Shown here piece by piece: positions 5,401 to 47,163 of a stretch of 64,000 nucleotides of DNA. Below the pieces are notes generated by a model that saw nothing but the letters and a program-made list of their open reading frames with translations, was not told the DNA's origin and did no database searches. This DNA comes from Lepidodermella squamata (taxonomy: Eukaryota > Animalia > Gastrotricha), in contig JBLDXI010000025.1 of the NCBI GenBank assembly GCA_047495785.1, positions 868,001 to 932,000 on the forward strand, given 5' to 3'. Positions within the stretch are counted from its first letter, which is position 1. The number at the start of each line of letters is the position of its first letter. Position numbers and translations under genes: made by a program.

Positions 5401-5637
5401 CTGGTTTGATTGCTTCGACATCCCTGCATTCGCTGTGGCTGACTCCGATTTTTTCAGCTTAGATTTGCCCATCATAAGGTCTTTTGAAGTGATTACACTC
5501 GTCAATCTTCCAGTACTTGCATTTTGTGTCGCTTGTGGTGGTAACGGCGTTGCCGGTGGTGGTAATAGTGGCGGCGGCGGTGGTGGTAACGACGTTGCCG
5601 GTGGGGGTAACGGCGGGGGTGGTGGTGGCTGATTCAT
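2484..5637 (-). CDS. Polyproline / Pro-rich repeat protein with C-terminal AIG1/GIMAP-family GTPase and coiled coil, ~1032 aa; exons 5637..3891 and 3835..2484
   Basis: A 55-bp GT..AG intron (3890-3836) joins the two ORFs in frame. Motifs: G1 GLTGAGKSS, G3 DTMG, AIG1-like 'VHVIMFCIKAGR' and 'LAITH'. A Glu/Gln/Lys/Arg-rich coiled coil follows. Confidence 0.85.
4070..5140 (-). repeat. Coding tandem repeat, ~138 bp (46 aa) x 7-8
   Basis: Recurrent unit SPGRLNPVSFQxPxTxxIxSxVPPKxQVADKQPPIPK...; boundaries approximate. Confidence 0.85.
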
Positions 5638-19390: not shown

Positions 19391-21012
19391 GGCAGGGGCT
19401 GTGAACTCACACCGGACAATGCATGGGGATTCAATTACTAAGGATGCTCTTTTGCCGTTTTTCTCTCATATCCGTGCTCTTTCTTTTTCCGTTGCGCAAT
19501 TTTCGTTTGAGCGAATAGCATAGAACTTATTTATTGAGTCCACCCAGATTTCCGGGAGGAAAACAGCTTGATGACGCAGCATTCTGCTGCTGAAAATAAG
19601 ACAGCATGCGTGAACAAAGTGCGTGACTTTTCGATTAAAATATGTTGTCACAAGCAGCAGGTGTCAAGCTGTTTTTTTTACTAACAACTACGATGACTAA
19701 GGCTACGAAGACGAAACTAATTGATGTTTCTCCCGCTAGTCCTTCAGTCAGACTTAAGCTGAAAAAGAGAAGTTGGGTGTGAAATAGTGAATTGCACACA
19801 AAAATATAGGCCAATTCGAAATTTAACGATGCAACACTCATAAATCGTTGATATTCGATTCGGCGGTTGTCAGCTAATACGCCAGATAAGGAAGACAACA
19901 TTTCTGTACAGTAGGCTGTGCACTAACACTATACTATATAACCCATTGCACGCTGTGTCCTGAAAGAATTTACTGGAAATGACCAAGGAATATCAATGAT
20001 TTAATGGTCTTTGTTGAGGGTAATTTTGAGATTCGCGGCGGCAACGTATCAGAAATTTCAAAGGCTTCATGAATAAAATATCCTTCCTTTTCAATAGTGA
20101 GGTTTTTCAAGGAACCTTCTTGGTTTGAAGATAGCCGGGTAGTATTTCGTCTTTCTAATATCTGATGCAACTTGCCTCCGATCTCCGATCATTTATAATC
20201 GTTTTTCTGTTGGTCTTCAGACACTGAGCGAAGTTTGGTAACTTGCATCTATATTATGCAGCAGGGTTCCAATTTCAAGCGGTTTGGTATAGTCTCAGGT
20301 CTCAGATCGACAACAATCGAGACCTTCCGCGATGCGACCACGATTTTCCACACGAGTAACTGGAGCTGATTCGTTTCAACAGTCGCAAGCTTGGAATTAC
20401 ATTTTCCATTTGCGAGTGGCCTGGCTCCACGCAGTTAGGATCGGTGATGTTGAGATTACGCTAACAGACAAAACCGCAAATAAAGCCTTGCTAATCTCAA
20501 TGTATAGAATTTCGTTGTGACATCCAGTTGTGTCGCTCAATTTTCGACTTCGGCAGAAACGGCAGAAACGAGTTGCAGAATCATTAACCAACTTCATCCG
20601 TTCCGCAACCTCCTGACATTTGACATTTGATCATTGTCATTGAATTCATGGCGTTTACTATAATAGATCTATGACCCAGCTCCGGACTTAATACGGCAAC
20701 ACAATGTGCTGTCAGCAACGATTCTGTATTGAATCCAGTGCATAGTTGCCTCCATGATAAAAATGTTTGAAAACCGGTCGAAAAACACCTGCAACACGTG
20801 CCTACAAAATATTATTTAAATGCTTCGTATAAGCTTCTTATAAGCTTCGTATAATCGATCAACCAGCCGTATCTTTGTTCGCAAAAAGCTGCGTCATCAA
20901 GCTGTTATTGTCCCGATGCACTGGAATGATCCCATAAATACTACCGCTAATTCGCCGAATTTCATTATTAACATTTTTCTTCCCAATAACTTGTTTCCTA
21001 TCCACAAGTAAA

Positions 21013-21382
21013 ATGGGCGGATCATTGCTCCCTGTATTGGCGGTTGTTATGGTGATCATCTCAGCTATCGCGGCGTTAAACTCGGGTAAGTTTTCTGATA
21101 CTGTTGTTCTTCAATGCGAAATTGAATCAATTTGTACTTTCAGGTATTGCTGGCTTCAAGAATGCTACAAAACGTTGCGATGCAGCAGACAAATCTAACA
21201 TGCTTGGCGTTGTTACGAGCATGAACGACGCTAAGATGTGCGCTGACAAGTGTAAACAGTTTGCTCCCTGCCGTGCTTTCGTCTATCTCACCAATTCACA
21301 TTATTACTGTGTCTTTTTTTCGAGCTGCGCCAACATGACAAACTTTGTCAAGGATGATGATATGCATTACATCAAGATCTAA
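21013..21382 (+). CDS. Small secreted PAN/apple-like protein, 103 aa; exons 21013-21085 and 21144-21382
   Basis: Hydrophobic signal peptide, phase-1 intron, and the pattern C..CADKC..C-x-AF..C..C typical of PAN modules. Confidence 0.75.
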
Positions 21383-21929
21383 AGTGTTGCGGAGCAGTAT
21401 TTCTGCTGAGAAAAGATGATTCGGATGCCCAAGTTTCTACGGAAGCCGAATCAAAGTTGATCAATTATCTCATCGCTTGATTGTTCTTAACTGCTTTGGA
21501 GAGGGAAATAAAGGAAATCAAGGCTTATAAGTAATAGCACTTCATTTCAGTTTAAACCTAACACAGCAATTCCATTTTCTATTGATATTGATATTGATAT
21601 TGATAAGTGTATCGGAGAATTATGCACGTAAATGCCTATCAGCTGACTTGGCAACTATTTACTATGGTAAGGTTAACTAGGCCTGCTTTGGACCATGGGC
21701 TATCTAAATGGGCCATGGGGTATCATGTTACATCTTGGTTATCAGATCTTTCGTGAGGGGCATAACCAGCCTTTCATGGCTGGGGGCCCGGCTCACATTT
21801 TCAGGGATCGCTCAAGGATCATGGAGCTATCAGGGATGGAAAAAAACTTACTTGCTGTATTGATGAAAATTACTTGTAATTTTAACTAGATTTAGCAACC
21901 TTTTTGGAATTCAAAGAGGGTGCCGAGCC

Positions 21930-22366
21930 GAAAGCCCCCGCCAACTGCTATAATTGACGCTTCCAGAGGTATTTGCGATTGGAATTGAGATCATTAAAAT
22001 GAAAGTTAAATCATCATTTACCTTTAAAAGCTTATCCTGGCCAGAAAATTGCGCAGGAATCTCCAATATTAACTTGCAATATCAACGAGCATGACTGTGA
22101 TCTTCTGCGAAAAAGCGGAGTTCCTAATTGGTGAATTGTCCGGGTTCTTCAACGCCTGAACACAGAATGCATTAAGCCGAGCAACAAGTAACAGGAGAAA
22201 CAACTTTTTCCGACAGGTCCGACAAAGATTTGTGGGTTAGAATGAACAGATGCGATGGATTTTTTGAAAGGGATCTTTTCATCGTCTCGAAATCAATTGG
22301 CGGATTCATGGATTGTCGCAGTAAATGGGGAACTTACTAGTCGTCATTTATGGAAACTGTTACCAT
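21930..22366 (-). pseudogene. Deleted subtype-B remnant
   Basis: Fragments of exons 1, 4 and 5; paralog of 42930-43399. Confidence 0.55.
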
Positions 22367-22590
22367 TCGAACAAAGACAAGAATATCAAAAATATCTAAA
22401 TATATCAAAAAAGGCATTATAATCAGCGTTTTATAGTAAACGTTTTCAACTTCGGACATTTCTAGTTTCGACCAAATAATAGAAAGAATTAATGTTGCAT
22501 GAAAAACTTGAGTGGATTTAAGAACAACATTCGCAGCAGCCGAATAAACTCTAGGAAACGACGTGAGTACAAATATTTCAATTGGATAAA

Positions 22591-25029
22591 TTAACAGCTT
22601 GTGAGCAAACGCAATCGATTATGCACTTCTTCAGGAGAATTTTCATCAACCAAGTCAACTAGCCTCTCCCCTCTGAGATTTTTCGCTCGCAGCAGTTTAC
22701 CAGCTTCAGGTCGCTCGAGCATTTGCTCCAGAACAGGCAAAAATGCAACATCGTGCAAAGCATAATGTAGAACGTTGTAACACCCAAGATTTGTAGCTGT
22801 GATATCAGCCCCACGATCAAGCAACAACGCAGCTGTTTCAATGGCATTGTTAGAGACCGCGATAAGCAACGGCGTGCTTTCTGCAAAGAAGCTCCAAAGA
22901 AAAATCGTAGTTATCCAACAAATATTCAACGCATTTAGTTCCACCGGACTCTTGGCAAGCGGCGTGAAGCAACGTAAACTCATCAGAATCAACATCATAG
23001 ACTGAGTCAGGAAGCTTTGAAATCGCAAATTTCAACATTTCAAGAGATCCAGATCCAGCGGCACAAATGAGGAAACTTTCGTCACGAGCTGTCAGCTCGC
23101 TGGGATTCATGTCACATTCATTAATCAGAAATTTCGCTGCTTCTACTTGGCCATGCTTCGCAGCAGTCATCAATGCATTGTCGCCGCTGTCATTGTCATC
23201 CAACACCTTGTTGCCAGATATTCGAATTAGAAGCTTCATCATTTCAATTTGCCCATTCGCAGAAGCCACTAGAAAAGGCGTCATATCGACATAACTCACG
23301 TTGCTGGAGATTTCTTCCGGATTTTGAGCGAGAATATATTCAGCGATCCCCAAATGTCCATTTGCAGCGGCTTCGTGGATCGGCGCAAATCCATTTATAT
23401 TCTTCAATGTCAAGTCTGAACCTTTTGATAACAAGTATTTTGCAACTTTCAGATGACCTTTCCGGCATGCTAGAAGAAAAGCCGTATCGCCCTCAGCGCT
23501 CGAAGCACAGATGTTGGCGCTGAAATCCTCTACTAGCATCTTGACGCATTTCAAGGATCCAGTTTCGCACGATTGCAGCAGCATAGTCTTCACATCGTCA
23601 TTATAATCTCTATGTTCGACTACTAAGGGTATGCAGATTTCGGGCAGCTTTTTCATAACCACAGACAACTTCGAAACATCGCCGCTTTTAGCAGCAGCAT
23701 GAAACTGATCAAACATATGATACTAAAGACAGTATTTTGAATTAATGATTATTAGGCCGGAAGAAATACCTCAGCAATGGCATCATCCAATTCCGGAGAT
23801 TTGGTTGAAGTTAATCGCAAGGCATTGACTAATTGATCTGCTATGGTTTTCTTAACCTCGAGATTGCAAGAGAAGTCAATTCTAGGAACGTCCAACTTGC
23901 TAGCAAGCACCAGTTTTGCGATCTGAATGTGAAAAATGAGAGAGGTACAGATTTACCATGGCCAGTTGCATAAATTTAAAAAATGAGGAAAGACAGGGAT
24001 TAGAATCATTATATTCATCGACAGCAATATTTTATAAGTAAGACATACTTTTTCAAAGAATGGTTATTTCAAATAGCGATACCTTGTTTGCCTGATTGGA
24101 AACCTTATCATGAACTTTCACAAAGACATCTCCCGTTTCGCCAAGAACTGATTTGGAGTTCGCTTTTGCTACAAGACCAGAGATTTCGGTTTTAGCCTTA
24201 GCGAGGCCTCAGTATCGATTGAAGGCCTTGAAATCTCCAGGTATTCCTTCCTCATAGCGTCAAGCTTTTCATGTAAAGTTTCGCGACGCAGTTCAACCGC
24301 AGCTTTGAATGATTCAACTAGATCCGAGCAACAGTTGTCAATTTGGCCTTTAACGTAAGACATAGTTCTATCAATTTTGTCTTCAGCAGTTTCAGAGTTT
24401 TTGGACGCGGGGGAGACAGCTTGCTCAAAGCAGTCTTCAAACTAGAATTAAAACAGAATAATCGGCTTGATTTCAGATACTGCAGAGGATTGCTTACAAA
24501 GAAATAGCTCAAGTTAAACTCTTGGCGGATTTGTTCCATATGAGCGACAAAGCAGATCGAACAGAATCTGTCTTCACAATGTTTGCAAAGTTTCAGATTT
24601 TTCTTCGGCAGACGCTGAGCGTGAGGACATTTTTCTCCAATGTTCGCTTCCTCGGCTAATTTCCTCTCGCTTTCAATCGCACAGACCGCTCCTTTGACAA
24701 CATAGTTGTCGGGCAAACCTTCAGCGAGAAATTATAACTATTTTTTAGTTTCAATGTTGAACTAACCGGTAATACCGGAGGGCGGTATGATCTGTCTCGC
24801 TCGACATTCTGGGCACTTGAAATGAGACTCGTTATTCTTGTAGACTTGCTCCTAGCATTTCCGGCAGAAGGTGTGCCCACACTGAGGCAACATCTTAGGA
24901 TTTTCTGCCAGATCCAAGCAAATAGAGCAGCTCAGAACCTGCAAATAAAGAACCACTGCTGAACGTCACTCATAGGATCTAACGAAAACTCACTGAAACG
25001 ATTGATGTAACGTCTGCTGATGATGACAT
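22591..25029 (-). pseudogene. RING-Bbox-CC-ankyrin gene, subtype A; premature TAG in the RING exon and a frameshift near 22880
   Basis: Six-exon structure retained. AAA TGC TAG at ~24852, where paralog 43623-47046 has TGC TTG. Confidence 0.8.
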
Positions 25030-25116
25030 TAAAATCAAGTAATAAGTAACTACGAATAAAAACGGATAGTGCAATGATCCACGAATTTAATTTCAGAACA
25101 TGACAAAGGTTTGTAA

Positions 25117-26750
25117 TCAGTTTCGTCCAGCTAATAACAACTGACGTTTCAAATCATCCGGCAAACTTTGGTCCATAACATCGATTGGTGTATTTCCGCT
25201 TGCGTTTTTGGTTTGTAACAAGGCCTTTACGCCAGGATGTCTGAGCAAAACTTGAATAATTTCAGCTCTGTTACCTCTTTCCAGAGCGGAATGCATCACG
25301 TTTTGATGACCTTTGGTGGTCACAATATTAATGTTAGCGCCTTTTCTCAACAACAGTTCAACTGTTGCGAGAGCGTTTGCGTGGACCGCTAAATGTAGAG
25401 CTGTGAAGCCGAATCTGCCCTTTGTGACGTCATTAACTGAAAACGAATGATATTCAAGCAAATAATCCACGCTCTTGCTGCCTTCCGGATTCGTGCAAGC
25501 GTTGTGTATAGCCAAATAACCAAGTTCGTCCGCTTCCATCAGCATATCTGGGCAGCGTTCTATCGCAAATTTCAGCATGGCCAAGTTTCCAGAATATGCG
25601 GCGCAGTGTATCAAATTTTCGTCTTTGTCAGACTTGGATTCGACAACAGCACCACATTCATAGAGCAAAAATTTGACAGCTTCAACCTGACCCTTGTAAG
25701 CGGCGTGGTGCAGCGCACAGCGTCCCTCAGCTTCTTTATCGTTCAAAACTCCCCTCGAGAACTCAAACATGGCCCTTGCAGCTTCAATTTTGCCATTCTC
25801 GACGGCAACAAGGAAAGGCGTCTTAGCATTTTTTCCAGAGATTTAATTGCATCAGGCGCTTTCTCTAGAATGAACTTGACAATGTCGACATGCCCATTCA
25901 GAATCTCCTTCAACATTTGAAGAGAGGACGTTGGAGTTATATTCTTCTATTATCAGTTTGACGCAATCCAGTGATCCAGCTTCAGATGATTGATGCAGCA
26001 TCGTATTTCCAGAATCACTTGAATCTCTATGATCAACAACCAATGGCACGCCAATATCAGGTAGCTTCTTCATAAGCGAGGACAACTTCGCTAAACAGCC
26101 TTCCTTCGCAGCTACGTGGAACTTTTCGAATTGAAACTTCTAGAAAGAGACTTTCGAAGGAATTTTTCTGATTAGGGGTCAAATTCTACCTCGAAACTAG
26201 CTTCACTGAGCTCCGGAGGGTTGATAGAAGTCAGTTCAAAAGCATCACTTAATTGATTCGCGGATGTTTTCTTGACCTCGCCATGGCAAGAAAATTCAAT
26301 TTTAGGATCAATCCGTTTGCTAACCAGCACAAGCTTCGCAATCTGTATTCAATTATTCACCGGAAAATGCATGAGTTTGTAATGAAGAAAACCTGATTTG
26401 CCTGCTTCGAAACCTCATCATGGACCATGGTCTTTCAAACTTAGGTTCATCGAAGGTTTAATTGAATGCCTTCCAAAACAATTCTAACTAACCAGCCACA
26501 CCTGACACCTGAAGCCGGCAACGCCTGATTTGTTCGGCATTCTGGGCACTGAAACGATGTTCCTTGTGGAAGCTTCTCAAACACCAGCTTCAAGCACCCT
26601 AGGCAATAGGTATGCCCGCATTGAGGCAGAATCTTGGGGTTTTCTGTTAGATCCAAGCAAATAGAGCAGGTTTTCCAAACTCGGAAGGATTCAAACTCTT
26701 CACAAAGAGCTCACCGCTACGATTGGAGGCAAATCGGCTGAAGATGACAT
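25117..26750 (-). pseudogene. Chimeric RING-ANK pseudogene: 5' part of subtype A fused out of frame to the 3' ankyrins of subtype B
   Basis: 25900-26750 matches 50830-52308; 25117-25899 matches 47164-47947. Confidence 0.75.
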
Positions 26751-35569: not shown

Positions 35570-38342
35570 TCAATTCTGTTCAACTAATGACAAAAACTGG
35601 TGCTTCAAGTCATCAGGTAGACCTTGGTTCATGATTTCAATAGGAGTTTCCCCACCAGAATTCTTGACCTGCAAAAAGGCTTTTGCGCCAGGGTATTTGA
35701 GCAAAGCTTGAATCACGCCAACTGTTCCACTTTTACGAAGAGCGAAATGCATTACGTTGCAATTTGCTCCGTTCAAAATATATATTTTAGCGCCTTTACG
35801 CAACAATGACTCAACTGTAGCAACAGCGCAATTGTCGGCCGCCACATGCAACGGTGCAAAGCCATTTTTGCACTTAGTGACGTCATTGACAGCAAAAGGA
35901 TGGTTTTCGAGGAGATAAGCCACGCATTCACTGCCCAATCGGTCAACACAAGCCAAATGAAGTACAGAATAACCAAAAGCATCCGTTTTCATCAACATAT
36001 CTGGGCAGCGCTCGATTGCAAACTTCAGCATTTCCAGATTGCCTGACAATGCGGCGCAATGGATGAAATCTTCTCAATGGTCTGACTTCGCTGCGGTATC
36101 GGCCCCGCATTTTTCGATCAAATATCTGGCTGAGTCAACTTTACCCGACAAAGCGGCGTGAAGCAAAGCACAGCGGCCATATCTTTTATCTTCGACAACA
36201 CTTCTGGAAAATGCAAACAACGTCTTAGCAGCTTTGATTTGACTGTTTCCAAGTGCAGCCAGAAACGGCGTCTGATTTTCGTCATCAACTGCTGTGATCT
36301 CACCAGGCGATTTTTCTAAGATAAATTTAAGAATGTCGATATGACCGTTCCAAGCTGCTACATGAATAGCGCCTTTGCCAATTAACCCTTTTAAAGTCGA
36401 ATACAGAAGCTTTACAATGTTGAGGTGGCCTTGTCTGCAGGCGATCAAGAAAGCTGAATCACCATCGTCCAAAGTGTACTCAGTATCGGCCATTTTCTTC
36501 TCGATCAGGAGTTTCACGGTTTCGTAAGCCCCTTTTTCAGAGGCTAAACAAAGCAGATCGTAGCCACCTTCGGATTTCGCTGTAGCAAGTTCCGGTTCAA
36601 TTTCAAGCAAAAACGATAGAATTTCCGGACGAGAGATGGCGAGATGGCAAGCCGTTTCTTTTTTTGACTCGGTCCACGCTAATAGATTAGGCTTGAACTT
36701 TTTACGTATCAATCGAAGACACTCAATTGATCCAGCCTCAGCCGACTGCAGTAAAAGCGTTTTCCCACCATCTGTACAATCAGGATGATCGGCGACAAGT
36801 TTACGACACAGTGGCGGTAGTTGCGAGATCAAACTCGAGAGTTTCAAAAAGTCACCAGTTTTGGCAGCTTGGTGAAACTCTTGGTACTGGAAATCCTGAT
36901 CGAAATAGAAATTTGCTCTCAACTAGGAAAGCAAATCATTCAAATGGAGAATCTTGCAGTGATATAGGTTAGACCTTCCAAATTTAACCAAGTTAGGGAG
37001 TAAGAGATCAATTTCGCTCATGACATAAAAAGGCAATATCTTCAAGCTGGTACTTCAATCTCCACGGTTCCCAAAGCTATATTTGACGCCTCCAGGAGTA
37101 ATTTGCGAATGGAAATGAGATCATTAAAACTAAAGACAATTCATCATTCACCTTACCCTGTTACCCTGGTCAGAAACTTCTGAAGGAATCTCCAATGTCA
37201 ACTTGCAATTTTCATCGAGCAAGGTTTCGATCTTCTGCGAAACAGAGCAGTCCCAAAGAAGTGAAATTTCGGGGCTCTTCAGGTTGTTACCCGCGCAAAA
37301 TTTCGCCACCTGAAATCAGAATGTACTAAGCCCGGTAAAAGGTAGAAGAAGAAACAACTTTTTCGGACTGGTCCGACAGTGTTCTGTGAGTTCGAATGAA
37401 TAGATGCGATGGATTTTCCAGCAACGATTTTCTATTGGCCTTTGCTAACAAAGCTAAACTCTTCAGAAGGGAACCTTTCATTGCCTCAATATCAACAGTC
37501 GGATTCATGGAGCCAGCCGCTTGTTGTCGCATTTGCTTCAAGGTAGCTCTCAAATTCTTGCAATGATCCGTAATCATGGTCTGGCATTTTTCAATCAGCA
37601 GAGCTCGAAGCTTGGATTTCCCGATCTAACTGCTCAATTGTTTTGTCCAGCTCGTTTGTTCGAGACTGCGCTAGATTAGAGGACTCTTCGACAACCGATT
37701 AAAAACCTTTCTTTCAACTATTCAAGCATTTTTAGAACAATTTAATATAAATAAATAAATAAATAAATAAATTGATATAAATTTAAGGCAATTTCATACC
37801 CTAAAACCAGCCAAGGTGAACTCTTGCCGAATTCTTTCCATGTGAAGGGCAAAGCAGGAATTGCAGAGGGCTTCATTGCAATGGTCACAGTGATTCAAAT
37901 CTTTTGCGACAGTCGAAGAAGCATGAGCACAACTCTCGCCAATTCTTGCCCGCTTAGCGCTGTTATTTTCCCCTTTTATTGCGTCAACAGCTCGCTTGAT
38001 GGCGTAGCTAACGCTCAAGGCTTTTTTGGGAAAAGATAATTAAAATCTGTCGAAACTAATGGAGAAAATACTATTCAATCCATTTGAACCCAGTGCAGGT
38101 ATTGTCTGTTCTTTACGACATTCAGGGCACGTTAACGCGGCGCCTTTCGCAACCTCCTTGTGAACATCCATTAGACATTCCAGGCAGAACGTAGAATTGC
38201 GGTAAGTTTTTAGGGCTCTTCAGTAGATCAAGGCATATTGCACAGCTAAGAGCCTTCAATCGGATTATCATTAAAACAGGATATTATGAGAGGAAAAGGG
38301 AAACTCACTGCAACAATCGTCATTTTTAGAAACCGTTGCCAT
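35570..38342 (-). pseudogene. RING-Bbox-CC-ankyrin gene, subtype B, with frameshifts
   Basis: Small deletions in exons 1, 2 and 4; the ankyrin ORF is broken at ~36074/36049. Confidence 0.8.
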
Positions 38343-38540
38343 TCGAGCAAATACAACAATACCTAAAATATCCAAGTATATTAGGTTTAGATTAGGCAGT
38401 ATGATGGGTTCATGATGGGTTGGACCAAATTAAAACTGAAAAATTTCATGTTGCATGAAATACTCGAGAAGCCGTATTCGCAGCGGCAAAATAAACCCTA
38501 TAAAACGACGCGAGGTCATTACAAATATTTCAGTTCGAAT

Positions 38541-38790
38541 AATTAACAGCCTGTGAGCAAACGCAATCAATCATACACTTCTTCGGGATAATTTTCATCA
38601 ACCAAGTTGGCTTCTCTCCTATGAGATTTTTCGCCCACATCAGTTTTCCTGCTTCAAGTCGCTCAAGCATTGCTCAAGAACATGCAAAAATGCAGCGTCC
38701 AGCGTCCTGCAAAGCATAATGAACGTTGTTATCCCCAACATCTTTAGCTGTGATATCAGCCAAACGTCCAAGCAACAACGCTGCTCTTTG
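38541..38790 (-). pseudogene. 3' ankyrin remnant (subtype A)
   Basis: Degraded match to 43623-43860. Confidence 0.55.
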
Positions 38791-39229
38791 GCAGCATGGC
38801 CGGGGATGTGAACTCACGCCTGACAATGCATGGGGATTTTATTACTTAAAGGATTTTATGTCGTTTTTCTCTCATATCCTTGCTCTTTCTTTTTCCTTTG
38901 TGCAATTTTCGTTTGAGCATATAGCATAGCACCCATTCACTGAGCCCAACCGGATATTCGGGAGGAAAACAGCTTGATGACACATCGTTCTGCTGTTGAA
39001 AATAAGACAGCATGCGTGAACAAAGTGCGTGACTTTTCGATTGAAATATAATGCTGACATTACAATTTAACTATATTGTCACAAGCAGCAGGTGTAAGTT
39101 GTTTTTTACTTATACTTATTCACCACATAACAGCGCAGGGTATATGACTCCATAAGTACTACCGCTATTTCGCAGAATTTCATTATTAACATTTTCTTCT
39201 CAATAACTTGTTTCCTATCCACGATTAAA

Positions 39230-39627
39230 ATGGCTGGATCATTGCTCCCTACTTTGGCGGTTTTCATGGTGATCATTTCAGCGATCGCGGCTTTAAACAC
39301 GGGTAAGCTTTCTGATACTACTGGCTGTTAATCTTCAATGCGGAATTAAATCAATTTGTTCTTTCAGGTATTGCTGGCTTCAGGAATGCTACAAAACGGT
39401 GCGGTGAACCAAACAATTCTAACATGTTTAGCCTTTTTCCGAGCACGCTCGACGCTCAGACTTGCGCTGACAAGTGTAACAAGGTTGCGCGCTGCTTCGC
39501 TTTTGTCTTTTACCGCCAGAAACTTTTTGACTGTGGCTTTTTTTCGAGCTGCGCCAACATTACAAATTTTTCCAAGGGGGATGATATGCAGTACATCAGG
39601 ATCAAAATGTTTTTCCAAGGAGGATGA
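39230..39627 (+). CDS. Secreted PAN/apple-like protein copy 2; exons 39230-39302 and 39368-39627; C-terminus altered by a short tandem duplication
   Basis: Same signal peptide, intron and Cys pattern as 41857-42228. Confidence 0.75.
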
Positions 39628-40051
39628 TATGCAGTACATCAAGATCTAAAGTTCTGCGGAGCAGTATTTCGGCTGAGAAAAGACAACTCGGATGCCTAAG
39701 TAGCAGCGGAGCCGAATCAAAGTTGATCAATGATCAATTATCTCATCGCTTGATTGTTCTTTGGAGAGGGAAATAAAGGAAATAGAGGCTTACAAGTAAT
39801 AGCACTTCAATTCAGTTTAAACTTAGGAGTTTTGACACAGCCAGCTATTCCATTTTCTATTGATATTGTTATTGATAAGTGTATCGGAGAATTGTGCATG
39901 TGAATGCCTATCAGCTGATTTAGCAACTATGTGCGATGGGTAGTTAACTAGGCCTGCTTTGGACCATGGACTATCTAAAAGGTGCTCCTGTTACATCTTG
40001 GTTAGATCTTTCGTTAATGTAAGGTGGATGCTTTGAAGAGCACCGTCTGGA

Positions 40052-40690
40052 CCAGGGCCGGATTAACGCATATGCACAGAGGGCACGTGCCCAGGGGCCG
40101 CCAGAAAGTGGTGAAATGTTCGATTTTATTAAACATTCCCGGAAGATTTTGTGGCCTTTATTAGGTCGTTATGCTTTGCAGCTTTCCAAGCATCCGGATA
40201 AGCCTATTTTGTTGATTTGCGCAAAATTTGCTCGCTTCGCTCGCTAGTCCGTCAACTATTATACAGTCTATTCTATCATTTATACCCCTATTCAATTCAT
40301 GTTGAACAAATGTAAAATCATTTAGGCATTTCAATGAAAAAATGAATGAGAGTTGAATCCTCTTGCCTCAATGTTTTCCGAGTTTACTCTATCAGAATGA
40401 AATGGGAAACGCAAGCATTTTCCTGCATGAGAAAAACGAGTTTCAGGAATATTATTGGAAAGTTCCTCGGTTCGCTCGTGGTAAGGTGACAATATTCCAA
40501 AATCGCGATTATTTTGTTGGAAATGGGAAAGCACTTATTAACGCTTTATTAACGCTATGTAGGTGGCTGGTAGCAACAAAGTAACAAAGCAAAATTAAGT
40601 TATGAAAGGAATTTGTGCTTTAATGAATCTCTCTTCTATCAGGAAATTGAGAAAATTGACTTTGATCTTGATTCCAGGTATGAAAACCTA
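40052..40690 (+). mobile_element. Degenerate hAT-like transposon remnant
   Basis: Terminus CAGGGCCGGATTAA...GGGCACGTGCCCAGGGGCC resembles hAT ends. The segment is absent from the paralogous block. The right end is uncertain. Confidence 0.45.
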
Positions 40691-41856
40691 GTTTCAGCGG
40701 AAAAATAAGAATAATTTATTTTATTTTAAAAATTTATGTTTCTTCCGCTAGTCTTCCGTCAGTCTTAAACTGAAAAAGAGAATTTGTGTGTGAAATATTG
40801 AATTGCACACGAAAATATAGGTCAATTCGAAATTTAACGATGCAACGATGCAGAAATCGTTGATATCTGACCTCGCCCTATTCGATTCGGCGGTTGTACG
40901 CTAAAACGCCAGATAAGGAAGACAACAAATCTATACAGCAGTCTGTGCACTAACACTATAGTATAAAACCCATTGCCCGCTGTGTAAACCAAAGAATTCG
41001 CTGGAGATGACCAAGGAATATCATTGACTTAATTGTCTTTATTGAGGGGAACTTAGAGATTCGTGGCGGCAACGTGCCAGAAAATTCTCTATAAAATATT
41101 CTTCCTATTCAATATTGAGGTTCAATTCGAAACCTTCTTGGTTTGAAGATAGCCGGGTAGTCTTTCGTCTTTCTAATATCTGAAGCAACTTGTCTCCAAT
41201 CTCCGATCATTTAAAATCGCTTTTCTGTTGGTCTTCCAGACTTCGCAAAAGTGCATCTATATTATGCTGCAGGGTTCCACTTTCAAGCGGTTTGGTTTAG
41301 TCTCAGGTCTCAGCTCGACTAAAATCGAGGCCTTCCGCGATGCGGCCACGATTTTCCACACGAGTAGCTGGAGCTGATTCGTTTCAACAGTCGCAAGCTT
41401 GGAATTACATTTTCCATTTGCGAGTGGCCAGGCTCCAAGCAATTAGGATCGGTGATGTTGAGATTACGTTAACAGTAAGACAAAACCGCAAATAAAGCTA
41501 ATCTCAGTGTATACCAGCTAAGATCCAGCTCTGGACTACGGCCACACAATGAGCTGTCAGCAAAAATTCTGCATTGAATCCAGTGCATAGTTGCCTCCAT
41601 GATGAAAAATGTTTGAAAAACGGTCGAAAAACACCTGCAACACGTGACTACAAAATATTATTCAAATGCTTCGTATAATCTTCGTATAAGCTTCGTATAA
41701 TCGATCAACGAGGCGTATCTTTGTTCGCAAAATGCTGCGTCATCAAGCTGTTTTGTGCCGATGCACTGGTATGACTCCATAAGTACTACCGCTATTTCGC
41801 AGAATTTCATTATTAACATTTTCTTCTCAATAACTTGTTTCCTATCCACGATTAAA

Positions 41857-42228
41857 ATGGCTGGATCCTTGCTGCCTACTTTGGCGGTTTTCATGGTGAT
41901 CATTTCAGCTATCGCGGCGTTAAACACGGGTAAGCTTTACTACTGGCTGTTAATCTTCAATGCGAAATTGAATCAATTTGTTCTTTCAGGTATTGCTGGC
42001 TTCAGGAATGCTACAAAACGGTGCGATGCACCAAACAATGCTAACATGATTAGCATTTTTCCGAGCACGCTCGACGCTCAGACTTGCGCTAACAAGTGTA
42101 ACAAGGTTGCGGCCTGCCGCGCTTTCGTCTTTCTCCGCCAGAAACATTATGACTGTGGCTTTTTTTCGAGCTGCGCCAACATTACAAATTTTACCAAGGA
42201 GGATGATATGCAGTACATCAAGATCTAA
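41857..42228 (+). CDS. Secreted PAN/apple-like protein copy 3, 103 aa; exons 41857-41929 and 41990-42228
   Basis: Signal peptide MAGSLLPTLAVFMVIISAIAA, phase-1 intron, six conserved Cys. Confidence 0.75.
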   Translation: MAGSLLPTLAVFMVIISAIAALNTGKLYYWLLIFNAKLNQFVLSGIAGFRNATKRCDAPNNANMISIFPSTLDAQTCANKCNKVAACRAFVFLRQKHYDCGFFSSCANITNFTKEDDMQYIKI

Positions 42229-42422
42229 AGTGCTGCGGATCAGTATTTCTGCAGAGAAAATAAAATTCGGATGCCTAAGTAGCTTCGGAAGCCGAGTCAA
42301 AGTTGATCAATTATCTCATCGCTTGATTGTTCTTAACTGCTTTGGAGAGGGAAATAAAGGAAATAAAAACTTATAAGTAATAGCACTTCATTTCAGTTTA
42401 AACTTAGGAGTTTTGACACAGC

Positions 42423-42790
42423 TTTTTTTTGTTATTTAAGAAAGTTTTCGGGTGCGCACTGTTGGTTATAGCACAAGCCCTAGGGCATGTATCGAAGATT
42501 TAAAAAAATTGATGTCAATGACAGCAGGGAAGCATTCTTTCGGAATTGTATTCCATTTTCTGATGATACCGAGCATTCTTTCAAATGGCTCGATATTCTT
42601 TCTGTCGCCTTTCGGTTGCTTGTTGCTTTGCCAGGCTGATTTGATCGTGGTGTAGTTCGGATGATGATCGGAATCTGCTTCGCCTTTTGAAAATGTGACT
42701 GAACTTCGAGCAAATTTGGGCGGTACCCGGCCGGCTACAACAATCTTATATAAGTAAGTCATCACTCCTACCTATCGCCGATGTCCGAGC
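42423..42790 (-). mobile_element. 3' fragment of a CR1/L2-like LINE with short poly(A) tail
   Basis: 'IIRKWNTIPKECFPAVIDINFFKSSI' resembles the WNxLP...FK C-terminus of LINE ORF2. T-run at 42423-42430. Absent from the paralogous block. Confidence 0.6.
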
Positions 42791-42929
42791 AGTTGCAATT
42801 TCGTTTAATATGTTTAATATTATTTTAAAATTAGTTGGCGCAAATGAATGTGAAACATTTGATATATTAGAAAGTTATTCTTCTGCATCACCATTCATTA
42901 AGAAATTCAGACTTTTTGGAATTCCAAGA

Positions 42930-43399
42930 GGGAGCCGAGCCAAAACTGCTATATAATTGACACCTCCCGGGGTATTCGCGATTAGAATTGAGATCATTAA
43001 AATTAAAGTTAAATATCATTTACCTTTGAAAACTTTTCCTGGTCAGAAAATTGCGAATGAATCTCCAATATCCAATATAAACTTGCAACTTTGATCGAGC
43101 ATGACTTTGATCTTCTGCGAAAAATCATAAAGAGTTCCACATCAGCGAATTTTCCAGGTTCTTCAACGCGGATAGGTTTGCCGCCTGAAAACAGAATTTA
43201 TTAAGCCGAGTAACATGTAAAGGGAGAAACAACTTTTTCCGTCAGGTCCGACCAAGTTTTGTGGGTTCGAATGAACAGATGCGATAGATTTTCCGAAAGG
43301 GGTCTTTTCATCGTCTCGAAATCAATGGCCGGATTAATGGAGCTTAATGGAACTTACTGCAACAATGTCGCAGTCGTCATTTTTAGAAACTGTTGTCAT
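42930..43399 (-). pseudogene. Deleted subtype-B remnant
   Basis: Exon 1 'MTTVSKNDDCDIVA' joined to fragments of exons 4 and 5. Confidence 0.6.
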
Positions 43400-43622
43400 T
43401 CGAACAAAAACAAGAATAACTAAAATATCAAAATATATCAAGTAAGGCATTATGATCACAGTTTTATAGTTAATGTTTTCAACTTCGGAAATTTCTAGAT
43501 TCGACCAAATTAAAAATGAAAGAATTAATGGTGCATGAAAAAACTGAGAGAATTTAAAAACAATATTCGCATCAGCCAAATAAAACGACGTGAGGTCACT
43601 ACTAATATTTCGATTCGATAAG

Positions 43623-46600
43623 TTAACAGCTTGTGAGTAAACGCAATCGACTATGCACTTCTTCAGGATAATTTTCATCAACCAAGTCAATTGGCTTCTC
43701 GCCTTTGAAATTTTTCGCCCGCAGCAGTTTTCCAGCTTCAGGTCGCTCGAGTATTTGCTCAAGAACATGCGAAAATGCAACAACGTGCAAAGCATAATGA
43801 AGAACGTTGTTACCCTCAAGATTTTTAGCTCCGATATCAGACCCACGATCAAGCAACAACGCAGCTGTTTCCATGGCATTGTTAGAGACCGCGATAAGCA
43901 ACGGCGTGCATTTTTCATACGTGAGAAGCTCTAAAGAAAAATCGTAGTTATCCAACAAATATTCAACGCATTTAGCTCCGGAGGTTTCTTGACACGCGGC
44001 GTACTCATCGTGTACTCATCAGAATCAACATCATAGACTGAGTCAGGAAGCTTCGAAATCGCAAATTTCAACATTTCAAGAGATGCAGATCCAGCTGCAC
44101 AAATGACGAAATTTTCGTCACAAGCTGTCAGCTCGCTGAGATCCATGTTACATTGATTGATCAGAAATTTCGCGGCCTCTAGTTGGCCATGCTTCGCGGC
44201 TGTCATCAATGCGTTGTCGCCGCTATCATTATCATCCAGCACCTTGTTGCCAGATACTCAAAGTAGGAGCTTCATCATCTCAATTTGCCCATTAGCAGAA
44301 GCCACTAGAAAAGGCGTCATATCGTCATTACTTTCGTTGCTAGCGATCTCTTCCGGATTTTGAGCTAGAATGTATTCAGCAACTCCCAAACGTCCATTGG
44401 CAGCAGCTTCGTGGATCGGCGCATATCCTTTTTTATTCTTCAAAGTCAGGTCTGAGCCTTTAGATAACAAGTACTTTGCAACTTTCAGATGTCCTTTACG
44501 GCAGGCTAGAAGAAAAGCTGTATCGCCTTCAGCGCTCGAAGCACAGATATCGGCGCTGAAATCCTCTACTAGCATCTTGACGCATTTCAAGGATCCGGTT
44601 TCGGAAGATTGCAGCAGCATAGTCTTCCCAGCGTCATTTGAATCTTTGTGTTCGACTATTAAGGGTAAGCAGATTTCGGGGAGCTTCTTCATAACCATAG
44701 ACAACTTCGAAACATCGCCGCTTTTAGCAGCAGCATGAAACTGATCAAACTTGTGATACTAAAGACAGTATTTTCAACTAAAGATTATCAGTTCGGAAAG
44801 AATACCTCAGCACTGGCATCATCAAGTTCCGGAGATTTGGTTGAAGTCAATCGCAAGGCATTGGATAATTGATCTGCTATGGTTTTCTTAACTTCGAGAT
44901 TGCAAGAGAAGTCAATTCTAGGAACGTCCAACTTGCTCGCATGTACCAGTTTCGCAATCTAAATTTCAAACGTGAACTCAGAATCACCACGGCGTCTATT
45001 TGGAAAATGATAAACGATTTGAACCAGACATATCTATGGACAAACAATTTTATTCCCAATTAAAATAGCTATACCTTCTTCTCCTCTTTGGAGACCTTAT
45101 CATGGACTTTCACGAAGAAATCTCCACTTTCGCCAAGAACGGATTTGGAGTTCGCTTTTGCTACGAGGCCATAGATTTCGGTTTTAGCCTTAGCCAAGGC
45201 CTCAGTATCGATTAGTGATGCGCTTCGATTTTTTGATAATCATGATTAATCGTGATTAAATCGAATCGAATATTAATCGAATTGCCTTGGGGAGAATCGC
45301 GATTATAATCGAATCGAGTCGGACTCGATTAATCGAGAATTTTGTTTCGATTATTTGCCTTTTTCTATCGATTTTACACGTTCCATGGCGATACTTAACT
45401 GGTTTTGGGAGTCTAAGATGCATTTTTTCCACATTATTCCTACTCTTCTTATTTTCCTATTCAGTTTGATTGCTGAACACTTGGAATCCCCTGAAAACTG
45501 TAGTTCATTATTAAAAAAATAAAAAAAATAATAATAGAAATCAATCGATAATTTAAAACCATTATCCATAATCGATGATTAATGAAAATATTTGCGATGA
45601 AACGAATGTTACCATTGTGATCAGCGTAAAATTTCACCCCAGTCCATCAATTTTCTCATGGATATTCGTTATAATAAGAAAGCTATCTCAAGATCAACTT
45701 TTACTTCCTGTTAAATTAATCGGTCCATCTTAATTTCAAAATTTTAAATTGTTGATTCAAATCAAGAAAACCGTTACCTTTGGTGACAAAATCCCCCTTA
45801 GAAACCCCGGAGGGGTAAAGTTAGCACGGGGAATCCGATAGCAATAGCAGAATTTTCGCAGCTATCGCACTTCCGGAGATAATTAGCATTTTTTTATTAT
45901 TTTATGACTTTATTGCTTCATATTTATCTCTCCCAAAATTGAATTTCTTAGCGATGTGTAATATATCAAATTACTCAGCTTTTCACGTAGATTCACGTGG
46001 TGCAATCCAAACTGTCATTGGAGTTACCAATATGCTTTTATAGTATTTTTAATTATATCAATTTTTAGAGAATTTTAACATTTTTAGATTGATCATGACG
46101 ATTAATCATGACGATTAATCGAATCGAATGGGATCCAAATAATCGCGATTATTTCGATTCGATTACGATTAAGTTATTCGATTAATCATTTCCCGAAAAA
46201 ATAATCGTAGCGCATCACTAGTATCGATTGAAGGCCTTGAAATCTCCAGGTATTCCTTCCTCATAGCTTCAAGCTTTTTATGTAAAGTTTCGCGACGCAG
46301 TTCAACCGCAGCTTTGAATGATTCAACTAGATCCGAGCAACAGTTGTCAATTTGGCCTTTAACGTAAGACATAGTTCTATCAATTTTGTCTTCAGCAGTT
46401 TCGGAGTTTTTGGACGCGGGGGAAACAGCTTGCTCAAAGCAGTCTTCAAACTAGAATTAAACAGAAACATCGGTCAAATTTCAGATACTACAGAGCAGGA
46501 TTGCTTACAAAGAAATAGCCCAAGTTGAACTATTGGCGGATTTGTTCCATATGAGCGACAAAGCAGATCGAGCAGAAGCTCTCTTCACAATGTTTGCAAA

Positions 46601-47046
46601 GTTTCAGATTTTTCTCCGGCAGGCGCTGAACGTGAGGACACTTTTCTCCAATTTTCGCTTCCTCGGCTAAATTCCTCTCGCTTTCAATCGCACAAACCGC
46701 TCCTTTGACAACATAGTTATCAGGCAAACCTTTGGCGAGAAAATGTAGTTATCTTTAAGTTTCACTGTTATGATTGATTAAACCTGTAATACCAGAGGGC
46801 GGTATGGTCTGTCTCGTTCGACATTCTGGGCACTTGAAATGAGACTCGTTATTCTTATAAACTTGCTCCAAGCATTCCCGGCAGAAGGTGTGCCCACACT
46901 GAGGCAACATCGTGGGATTTTCTGCCAAATCCAAGCAAATAGAGCAGCTGAGAGCCTGCAAAGAAAGCACCACAGCTATACACCCTTCATAGAATCTTTC
47001 AAAAACTCACCTAAACGATCGATGGCATGTCTGCTGATGATGACAT
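43623..47046 (-). pseudogene. RING-Bbox-CC-ankyrin gene, subtype A, inactivated (stops, frameshifts, hAT insertion)
   Basis: TAG at the end of exon 1 and at 46530; ankyrin ORF split into three; insertion at 45213-46220 in the coiled-coil exon. Confidence 0.85.
45213..46220. mobile_element. Non-autonomous hAT-type element (1008 bp)
   Basis: TIR TAGTGATGCGCT(T/A)CGATT, exact 8-bp TSD GTATCGAT, ATTAATCGA-type subterminal repeats. Empty site in the paralog at ~24212. Confidence 0.92.
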
Positions 47047-47163
47047 TAAACATTAAAATCAAGTACTAAGTAACTAGGAGCAATGAAAGCGGATACTGTA
47101 ATGTTAATGTATTTTAAGCACTGTTCCGCGAGTTTGATTTCATAACATGACAATGGTTTGTAA

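What the first reader, a model, noticed from the sequence alone, without database searches (positions are those of the whole stretch)
39230..42228. Secreted PAN-like mini-proteins with conserved signal peptide and hypervariable mature domain
Seen by manual codon comparison of copies 39230 and 41857. The signal-peptide exon has 4 differences, all synonymous. The mature region between the first and fifth Cys has 11 amino-acid-changing codons (G/D, E/A, S/A, F/I, L/I, D/N, R/A, F/R, Y/L, L/H, F/Y) and only 1 synonymous change, while all Cys are kept. Copy 21013 diverges further at the same positions. Established: this pattern characterises toxins, defensins and recognition proteins under positive selection. 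Inference: a rapidly evolving secreted recognition or effector family embedded in the E3 array.
Basis: partly seen in the sequence, partly recalled or inferred. Interest (0 to 1): 0.75.

Follow-up and report, generated by a model that had tools for sequence, protein, structure and literature searches.

The report
Fast-evolving secreted PAN mini-protein genes
Three neighbouring two-exon genes of a tiny invertebrate (probably a gastrotrich) belong to a family of about 25 small secreted PAN/apple-fold proteins in which the promoter, signal peptide and intron are conserved while the mature domain changes unusually fast. This pattern is familiar from toxin and immune gene families, but it is new on this fold and in this phylum.

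Summary
Copies A (39230) and B (41857) differ by 4 synonymous changes in the signal exon. Between Cys1 and Cys5 they differ by 14 nonsynonymous changes in 11 codons and 1 synonymous change, and all six Cys are kept.

The PAN/apple assignment is supported by a family profile against PDB, by an AlphaFold model and by fold search. Single sequences stay below Pfam's cut-offs.

The A/B pair alone does not show positive selection. Exon-wide omega is about 2, with p about 0.1. Most changes lie on the A lineage, which also lost its stop codon through a 43-nt tandem duplication.

Support for positive selection comes from two other tests:
- **B versus C:** nonsynonymous divergence is 1.7-2.0 times that of about 5 kb of collinear flanking DNA (p about 0.001).
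- **Family site models (20 paralogues):** M1a/M2a LRT 59.6, with about a third of sites at omega about 2.5. No such signal appears in the signal exon.

Some sister pairs are under purifying selection, so the genes are functional and selection varies between copies.

Transcription, tissue and ligand could not be tested. This scan has already flagged the same family on other DNA of this genome (s1-394031, s1-404909). I rate it a new member of a known kind.

The parts
20928..20955 (+). Copy C: family-conserved core-promoter motif (GAxxCxATAAATAC...CGC, TATA-like), about 58-85 nt before the ATG
   Evidence: Seen. The same motif sits at the same distance in nearly all family members.
21013..21085 (+). 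Copy C exon 1: signal peptide (24 codons plus the first base of a split codon)
21086..21143 (+). Copy C intron (58 nt, phase 1, GTAAGT...TTTCAG)
21144..21382 (+). Copy C exon 2: mature six-Cys PAN-like domain, stop at 21380-21382. An AATAAA follows at 21507-21512.
39146..39173 (+). Copy A core-promoter motif. Homology to B and C starts only at 39143.
   Evidence: The 87 nt before the ATG show 0 differences from copy B.
39230..39302 (+). Copy A exon 1: signal peptide, same residues as B, 4 synonymous differences
39303..39367 (+). Copy A intron (65 nt)
39368..39627 (+). Copy A exon 2: mature PAN-like domain with a seven-residue read-through tail, stop TGA at 39625-39627. An AATAAA follows at 39772-39777.
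39567..39652 (+). Copy A: 43-nt tandem duplication (39567-39609 and 39610-39652). Unit 1 carries 5 changes, including loss of the ancestral stop. Unit 2 is 1 mismatch from copy B.
41773..41800 (+). Copy B core-promoter motif. Homology to copy C extends upstream to about 40731.
41857..41929 (+). Copy B exon 1: signal peptide
41930..41989 (+). Copy B intron (60 nt, which happens to be open and in frame)
41990..42228 (+). Copy B exon 2: mature PAN-like domain, stop at 42226-42228. An AATAAA follows at 42353-42358.
19719..25899 (.). Segmental duplicate holding copy C and an ankyrin gene. It is collinear with 40731-47947, which holds copy B. Mismatch divergence is 0.09-0.12, and I used it as the local neutral yardstick.

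Best explanation
The three loci are real two-exon genes for secreted proteins of about 100 residues. Each product has a cleavable signal peptide followed by one PAN/apple module held by three disulfides. They are the youngest branch of a lineage-specific family of about 25 genes, most of them on this contig.

In that family the 5' part of the gene (TATA-like promoter, 5'UTR, signal exon, 3' half of the intron) and the poly(A) region are kept. So is the fold scaffold: six Cys, the N-terminal IAG-aromatic motif, C-R-A-F, and the C-terminal Y-x-K. About a third of the mature-domain positions change faster than neutral DNA.

The most likely mechanism is repeated local duplication followed by diversifying selection on the binding surface of a soluble PAN module. 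PAN modules bind glycans or proteins in all characterised relatives. The outcome would be a repertoire of secreted binders with different specificities.

Shown here: the gene anatomy, the fold assignment, the rate contrast and the site-model result. Inferred: secretion, disulfide pairing and ligand binding. My leading guess for function is recognition of microbes or other environmental targets, and it is only a guess.

Copy A is the fast branch and has an altered C-terminus. It may be a new variant or may be starting to decay.
For: Gene model:
- Conserved GT/AG boundaries, with intron lengths of 53-77 nt that are mostly not multiples of three.
- Four intronless paralogues (L020, L021, L037, L038) join exactly at the predicted junction.
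- The TATA-like motif and an AATAAA sit at fixed distances in nearly all members.

Fold:
- Three Pfam PAN families hit at E 5e-4 to 0.1.
- The family profile hits TgMIC4 apple at E 5.7e-6 and the HGF N domain at 5e-5.
- The AlphaFold2 model has pLDDT 79, pTM 0.71 and a beta-beta-alpha-beta-beta-beta order.
- The 14 best structural matches are all PAN/apple, Z 8.3 to 5.9, over the full length.
- The protein-atlas search places it in PAN clusters at 0.95.

Rate contrast across the family:
- Mean pairwise identity is 0.80 in exon 1, 0.72 in the intron, 0.70 in the 60 nt upstream and 0.58 in exon 2. Exon 1 is more conserved than exon 2 in 119 of 120 pairs.

Selection:
- M0 omega is 0.78, and my code reproduces IQ-TREE's lnL of -3559.94.
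- M1a/M2a LRT is 59.6, M7/M8 is 38.3 and M8a/M8 is 35.5.
- The LRT is still 16-45 after dropping the indel-prone loops, and 46 and 9.3 for the two halves on their own trees.
- The signal-exon control gives an LRT of 0.19.
- B versus C: nonsynonymous divergence is 0.181, against 0.091-0.106 in the collinear flanks of the same duplication (p 0.0008-0.002). Synonymous sites run at 0.82 times the background.

Functionality:
- L020/L021 show 0 nonsynonymous and 6 synonymous differences.
- L004/L012 have omega 0.16.
- The signal exon of A/B shows 0 nonsynonymous and 4 synonymous differences.
Against: - There is no transcript, protein or tissue evidence.
- The exon-wide omega of the three copies is not significantly above 1. 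The three-taxon model gives omega 2.1 with p 0.11. The clade branch model gives 2.0 with p 0.11.
- Seven independent sister pairs give pN/pS of about 0.75 in both loops and secondary-structure elements. The fast sites are therefore not simply the loops.
- Site-model tests on paralogues can be inflated by gene conversion and alignment error. The two halves of some pairs have unequal branch lengths, which hints at mosaicism.
- In my site models the branch lengths were fixed up to one scale factor.
- Some members are dead: L005 and L039 carry in-frame stops and L022 lacks the promoter motif. Birth-and-death with relaxed constraint therefore contributes.
- I could not map selected sites onto a surface, because no model coordinates were available.
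Confidence: 0.6

Rival explanations
1. Relaxed constraint rather than adaptation. After each local duplication one copy is redundant and drifts, so the excess of amino-acid changes, above all between A and B, is neutral decay of a copy on its way to becoming a pseudogene.
For: - The A branch is about five times longer than the B branch: 0.20-0.21 against 0.04 substitutions per codon.
- At least 7 of the 14 A/B residue differences are derived in A. One is the loss of the family-conserved Arg of C-R-A-F.
- A lost its stop codon and gained a frameshifted tail.
- A versus B: nonsynonymous divergence is 0.090, against 0.070 at neutral sites, p 0.26.
- L005 and L039 are broken.
- The family-wide M0 omega of 0.78 is below 1.
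Against: - Neutral drift cannot push nonsynonymous divergence to 1.7-2.4 times the divergence of flanking DNA, as seen for B versus C while synonymous sites match the background.
- M8a, which allows a neutral class, is rejected against M8 (LRT 35.5).
- All six Cys and the scaffold residues are intact in A.
- A's signal exon has only synonymous changes, and its 87-nt promoter/5'UTR is identical to B's.
Confidence: 0.2
2. Concerted evolution of the 5' part. Gene conversion keeps homogenising the promoter, signal exon and intron among paralogues. The mature exon would then only look hypervariable because it keeps the true, old divergence.
For: - In distant pairs the synonymous divergence of exon 1 is lower than that of exon 2, for example 0.19 against 0.51 for L007/L015.
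- The intron is more conserved than exon 2 in 87 of 105 pairs.
- On the exon-2 tree, the signal exon evolves at 0.51 times the scale of exon 2.
- Chen et al. 2010 (PMC2955719) proposed homogenisation for the same pattern in Hessian fly salivary genes.
Against: - For B versus C, the flanks and intron diverge as much (about 0.10) as 5 kb of collinear DNA outside the gene (0.09-0.12). No homogenisation is needed there, yet the mature exon is still faster.
- A and B differ at 4 synonymous sites in exon 1, so that exon was not recently converted.
- Promoters carry subfamily-specific signatures that follow the exon-2 clades.
- Conversion does not explain a site class with omega above 1.
Confidence: 0.15
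3. The proteins are structural or adhesive matrix components (cuticle, egg coat or adhesive-gland secretion). Sequence outside the scaffold would then matter little, and the diversity would carry no recognition function.
For: - PAN modules are common in extracellular matrix and cuticle proteins.
- This genome holds at least 96 PAN-like exons in many architectures.
- Fast sites are not concentrated in loops.
Against: - Matrix components normally show omega well below 1.
- Here a third of the sites have omega of about 2.5.
- The closest solved relatives by sequence are soluble or lectin-type PAN modules: TgMIC4, SML-2 and the HGF N domain.
Confidence: 0.1

Closest known systems
PAN/apple modules: HGF N domain, plasminogen PAp, Toxoplasma MIC4 apple domains, Sarcocystis SML-2 lectin, Eimeria MIC5 PAN module
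   Same: - The predicted fold and order of elements are the same.
- The C-x3-C pair sits in the helix, followed by C-x5 and then a Cys in the hairpin.
- Profile E-values run from 6e-6 to 3e-3 and structural Z from 8.3 to 6.2 over the full length.
- These relatives are ligand-binding extracellular modules.
   Different: - Here the module stands alone behind a signal peptide and makes up the whole protein (about 78 mature residues).
- The sixth Cys lies five residues after the fifth, not at the C-terminal end as in apple domains.
- Single sequences miss Pfam's gathering scores.
- No ligand is known.
- No relatives turned up in three word searches of 5.8 billion proteins.
Hessian fly small secreted salivary gland protein genes (SSSGP-1; Chen et al. 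2010, PMC2955719)
   Same: - The genes form a tandem and inverted local cluster.
- Promoter, UTRs, signal-peptide region and intron are conserved, while the mature coding region is highly diversified.
- Positive selection was inferred there too.
   Different: - The fold and the phylum differ.
- The fly proteins are effectors of a plant parasite and are known to be expressed in salivary glands.
- This animal is a free-living microscopic bacterivore, and expression is unknown.
Conotoxin superfamilies and mussel MgCRP-I cysteine-rich peptides (PMC3862624, PMC4558851)
   Same: - The signal (pre) region is conserved.
- The mature peptide is hypervariable with an invariant six-Cys framework.
- They are multigene families.
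- The signal and the mature part lie on separate exons.
   Different: - Those are short knottin-like peptides with a pro-region and long introns.
- Here the product is an 80-residue alpha/beta PAN module with no pro-region and a 60-nt intron.
- There is no evidence of venom or antimicrobial activity.

Membership tests
PAN/apple domain superfamily (Pfam clan: PAN_1, PAN_4, PAN_2) | A single sequence scores above Pfam's gathering cut-off | tested here: not met
   PAN_4 scored 18.0-20.6 bits against a cut-off of 27. PAN_1 scored 17.4-19.2 bits against 21.4. All three copies hit three families of the same clan and nothing else.
PAN/apple domain superfamily (Pfam clan: PAN_1, PAN_4, PAN_2) | Significant profile-level sequence similarity to solved PAN/apple modules | tested here: met
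   The profile of 17 family members hit TgMIC4 at E 5.7e-6, the HGF N domain at 5e-5, the kallikrein and factor XI apple domains at 2e-4 to 2e-3, and EtMIC5 at 3e-3. All 33 hits are PAN-containing chains.
PAN/apple domain superfamily (Pfam clan: PAN_1, PAN_4, PAN_2) | Fold: an antiparallel beta-sheet with one alpha-helix packed on it, with a central hairpin | tested here: met
   This rests on a predicted model only; pLDDT 79, strands at 5-7, 20-24, 45-49, 55-59 and 74-78, helix at 30-39; the top 14 of 48,161 chains are all PAN/apple, Z 8.3-5.9, with 62-74 of 79 residues aligned. Foldseek's top hits are the same proteins, but with E of only 0.02.
PAN/apple domain superfamily (Pfam clan: PAN_1, PAN_4, PAN_2) | Conserved core cysteines: two in the helix (C-x3-C) bonded to the hairpin strands | tested here: inconclusive
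   The pattern C-x20-C-x3-C-x5-C-x12-C-x5-C is invariant in 17 members and fits the family. The disulfide pairing itself cannot be read from sequence.
PAN/apple domain superfamily (Pfam clan: PAN_1, PAN_4, PAN_2) | Binds a protein or carbohydrate ligand | not testable with these tools
   This needs recombinant protein and binding assays.
Hypervariable secreted cysteine-rich families (conotoxin, SSSGP and MgCRP type) | Signal region conserved, mature region hypervariable, cysteine framework invariant | tested here: met
   Exon 1 has 0.80 nucleotide identity against 0.58 for exon 2, and exon 1 is the more conserved in 119 of 120 pairs. All six Cys are invariant.
Hypervariable secreted cysteine-rich families (conotoxin, SSSGP and MgCRP type) | Nonsynonymous rate above the neutral rate at part of the mature sites | tested here: met
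   This is not met by the A/B pair alone.
Hypervariable secreted cysteine-rich families (conotoxin, SSSGP and MgCRP type) | Expressed in a secretory tissue and released | not testable with these tools

The most novel reading that the evidence does not exclude
A gastrotrich-specific repertoire of soluble PAN binders serves as a diversified recognition system, for example against microbes. The mature exon would be diversified by a process that spares the adjacent promoter, signal exon and intron. That would mean exon-targeted accelerated change rather than ordinary selection on random mutations. It would give an immune-type variable family on a scaffold not used for this purpose anywhere else.
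Probability: 0.08. Interest if true: 0.8.

Novelty: new member of a known kind. Interest (0 to 1): 0.42.

Why it matters
Gastrotrichs are almost unexplored at the molecular level. A family of about 25 small secreted binders under diversifying selection would point to how a microscopic freshwater animal deals with microbes, prey or mates.

It would also add the PAN/apple fold to the short list of scaffolds (knottins, defensins, three-finger toxins) that evolution uses for hypervariable secreted repertoires.

The very compact genes, together with several recent duplicates at different stages (conserved, diverging, broken), make this a convenient natural series for studying birth-and-death and exon-specific rate differences.

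The practical value is modest until expression and a ligand are known.

Tried and rejected
**Searches for relatives**
- Three word searches found nothing: exon 2 of B, a profile of 17 members, and the intronless full-length L021.
- I did not run the large HMMER search of 1.84 billion representatives. The operators called it costly, and the main claim does not rest on the absence of relatives.
The full-length queries I did use were natural intronless paralogues.

**Tools and data that were not available**
- A COX1 search of the assembly found no mitochondrial contig.
- The species name rests only on matching assembly statistics in PMC11660948.
- Rfam found nothing at 38000-44000.

**Ideas that failed**
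- The idea that fast sites are simply the loops failed: pN/pS is 0.78 in loops and 0.71 in secondary-structure elements.
- A RING domain in the neighbouring ankyrin genes was not found in the reading frames I scanned. One exon looks B-box-like by eye.

- An analysis with many MAFFT calls timed out, and I redid it with a pairwise aligner.
- The script held a typed 79-residue string (the product of copy B exon 2) to map alignment columns. It should have been read from file. Only the column numbering depends on it.
Full report
**What is there**

The window is contig 25, 868001-932000, of a 121.2-Mb eukaryotic assembly in 151 contigs. It has about 43% G+C and introns of about 60 nt.

These figures match the published assembly of the freshwater gastrotrich Lepidodermella squamata: 122 Mbp, 157 contigs, 43% GC (PMC11660948). 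Earlier notes of this scan made the same guess. I treat the species as probable, not shown. The assembly has no mitochondrial COX1 to check it against.

Three close copies of one small gene lie on the plus strand:
- **C:** 21013-21382
- **A:** 39230-39627
- **B:** 41857-42228

Each copy is built the same way:
- a 73-nt exon 1 encoding a hydrophobic 24-residue leader;
- a phase-1 intron (GTAAG...TTTCAG) of 58-65 nt;
- an exon 2 of 79 codons in B and C (86 in A) with six Cys.

**Check of the observation**

A and B differ by 4 synonymous and 0 nonsynonymous changes in exon 1. Between Cys1 and Cys5 they differ at 11 codons (14 nonsynonymous steps) and have 1 synonymous change.

The difference in N:S between the two exons is significant (0:4 against 17:1, p 0.0007).

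Two points need correction:
- Copy C shows a third residue at only 3 of the 11 A/B positions. Most of its divergence is elsewhere in the same segments.
- Copy A carries a 43-nt tandem duplication (39567-39609 and 39610-39652, 5 differences). Its first unit has AAA where all relatives have the stop. A therefore reads on out of frame through seven extra residues to a TGA at 39625-39627.

**Are these real genes?**

The indirect evidence is good.

- A profile search of the genome finds at least 96 PAN-like exons. Among them is a core family of about 25 genes with the same two-exon plan, most of them on contig 25 between 0.19 and 1.18 Mb.
- Nearly all members share a TATA-like motif (GGACTCAATAAATACC...) about 58-85 nt before the ATG, and an AATAAA 104-161 nt after the stop.
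- Intron lengths vary from 53 to 77 nt and are mostly not multiples of three, so the frame is kept only by splicing.
- Four paralogues (L020, L021, L037, L038) lack the intron and join exactly at the predicted junction. This confirms the splice model and suggests that spliced mRNA existed in the germ line.
- Some sister pairs are under clear purifying selection: L020/L021 show 0 nonsynonymous and 6 synonymous differences, and L004/L012 have omega 0.16.
- A few members are broken: L005 has a stop in the signal exon, L039 has a stop in exon 2, and L022 lacks the promoter motif.

**Fold**

- Single sequences hit PAN_4, PAN_1 and PAN_2, but below Pfam's cut-offs.
- A profile of 17 members hits only PAN/apple chains in the PDB. 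The best are Toxoplasma MIC4 at E 5.7e-6 and the HGF N domain at 5e-5.
- An AlphaFold2 model of copy B exon 2, built with the family alignment, has pLDDT 79 and pTM 0.71. Its order of elements is beta, beta, helix, beta, beta, beta.
- An all-against-representatives structural search puts PAN/apple modules in the first 14 places. The HGF N domain scores Z 8.3, plasminogen PAp 7.8, SML-2 lectin 7.0, MIC4-A5 6.7 and EtMIC5 6.2. Foldseek ranks the same proteins first, with weak E-values.
- The protein-atlas search agrees.
- The six Cys, with the spacing C-x20-C-x3-C-x5-C-x12-C-x5-C, are invariant in the family.

**Rate contrast**

Across 120 family pairs, mean identity is 0.80 in exon 1, 0.72 in the intron, 0.70 in the 60 nt upstream and 0.58 in exon 2. 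Shuffled controls give about 0.54. Exon 1 beats exon 2 in 119 of 120 pairs. 'Conserved signal, hypervariable mature domain' is therefore a property of the whole family.

**Is it positive selection?**

For the three copies the codon-only tests are suggestive but not significant:
- Nei-Gojobori omega is 1.8-4.4.
- The three-taxon ML omega is 2.1, with LRT against 1 of 2.49 and p 0.11.
- The clade branch model gives omega 2.0 against a background of 0.74. Against 1, p is 0.11. Against the one-ratio model the LRT is 5.4.

Nonsynonymous divergence is 0.090 against 0.070 at pooled non-coding and synonymous sites (p 0.26). The A branch is about five times longer than the B branch. At least 7 of the 14 residue differences are derived in A, including loss of the Arg of the family's C-R-A-F motif.

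A better yardstick exists for B versus C:
- Both copies sit in a collinear segmental duplication (19719-25899 and 40731-47947). Its mismatch divergence is 0.09-0.12 over about 5 kb, including 0.091 in 757 nt of intergenic spacer.
- The gene's own flanks and intron show the same value, about 0.10. Its synonymous sites run at 0.82 times the background.
- Its nonsynonymous sites run at 1.7-2.0 times the background (p 0.0008-0.002), and at 2.4 times between Cys1 and Cys5.

At family level I wrote a GY94/F3x4 likelihood code that reproduces IQ-TREE's M0 lnL of -3559.94. The data set has 20 sequences and 74 codons.
- M0 omega is 0.78.
- M2a beats M1a by LRT 59.6, with 33% of sites at omega 2.7. M8 beats M7 by 38.3 and M8a by 35.5.
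- The signal survives removal of the indel-prone loops (LRT 16-45), restriction to gap-free columns, and separate trees for the two halves (LRT 46 and 9.3).
- The signal exon shows nothing (LRT 0.19).

Caveats:
- Branch lengths were fixed up to a scale factor.
- Paralogues may exchange segments.
- Unequal half-gene branch lengths in some pairs hint at mosaicism.

**Where the fast sites lie**

Fifteen columns have posterior above 0.95. In copy B exon-2 numbering they are residues 14, 15, 18, 20, 23, 24, 25, 28, 47, 53, 57, 66, 70, 71 and 74. They fall in these places:
- the Cys1-to-beta2 loop and beta2;
- the loop before the helix;
- the beta3-beta4 hairpin;
- the loop after Cys6.

The helix, the Cys, the N-terminal I-A-G-aromatic motif, A-F after Cys4 and the C-terminal Y-x-K are conserved.

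An a-priori split into loops and secondary-structure elements shows no difference in seven sister pairs (pN/pS 0.78 and 0.71). The fast sites are therefore not simply 'the loops'. Without model coordinates I could not test for a surface patch.

**Surroundings**

- The neighbours on the minus strand are repeated ankyrin-repeat genes in units of about 10.5 kb. They have a B-box-like zinc-finger exon, judged by eye. I found no RING in the frames I scanned.
- An earlier follow-up of this scan (s1-404909) concluded that the PAN genes were pasted into a TRIM-like array and are not a paired system.
- My homology map agrees with pasting. A shares only 87 nt upstream with B and C but keeps C-like downstream DNA that B has lost.
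- Also in the window are an AIG1/GIMAP-type GTPase, a receptor-family ligand-binding domain gene and piggyBac remnants.

**Comparison with what is known, and verdict**

The gene-level pattern matches three described cases:
- Hessian fly salivary SSSGP genes (PMC2955719);
- conotoxins (PMC3862624);
- mussel MgCRP-I peptides (PMC4558851).

I found no paper linking gastrotrichs and PAN domains.

The finding is real. The PAN reading is right. The claim of diversifying selection is supported for the family and for the B/C comparison, but not by the A/B pair alone. Function and expression remain open. I rate it a new member of a known kind, of moderate interest.

Noticed in passing
window 39567-39652: A 43-nt tandem duplication sits at the 3' end of copy A. 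The translated first unit has 5 changes, including loss of the stop. The untranslated second unit is nearly identical to copy B. The assembly came from amplified DNA of one animal, so this should be confirmed with independent reads.
   Followed up: partly
L020/L021 (G000:C25:811433-813466) and L037, L038 (contigs 28 and 20): These family members are intronless and join exactly at the predicted splice junction, yet they keep the upstream promoter motif. That suggests precise intron loss rather than simple retroposition. L020 and L021 form an inverted pair with 0 nonsynonymous and 6 synonymous differences.
   Followed up: partly
G000:C25:1164124-1177307 (L041, L012, L042, L013, L014): This is a very recent local amplification. 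Three copies of one PAN gene have identical exon 2, and so do two copies of another. They are interleaved and one is inverted.
   Followed up: no
window 4084-5110, minus-strand reading frame 3826-5637: Six or seven tandem 138-nt (46-codon) repeats lie inside a long open frame directly upstream of an AIG1/GIMAP-type GTPase frame (2484-3851). This may be a repeat-bearing immune-type GTPase gene.
   Followed up: no
window 11087-13088: Two adjacent frames match the two halves of a piggyBac-type transposase (DDE_Tnp_1_7). This is a broken or intron-bearing copy.
   Followed up: no
window 27548-29851: A single 767-codon open frame with a receptor-family ligand-binding (Venus flytrap) domain lies between two ankyrin units. 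I did not check whether it has a membrane part.
   Followed up: no
window 41930-41989: The intron of copy B is exactly 60 nt and open in frame, so intron retention would add 20 residues without breaking the protein. The introns of A (65 nt) and C (58 nt) do not allow this, so it is probably chance.
   Followed up: no
family-wide, 3' half of the intron (for example window 41955-41989): A stretch of about 30 nt before the acceptor (AATGCGAAATTGAATCAATTTG..CTTTCAG) is conserved among paralogues whose mature domains are only 32-41% identical. It is more conserved than a branch point and polypyrimidine tract would need. This may be a regulatory element or a sign of homogenisation.
   Followed up: partly
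window 37794-38018, minus strand: An exon of the neighbouring ankyrin gene has a C/H pattern like a B-box zinc finger. Pfam gave only a weak FYVE hit. No RING was found in the frames scanned, so the 'E3 ligase' label for the array is unconfirmed here.
   Followed up: partly
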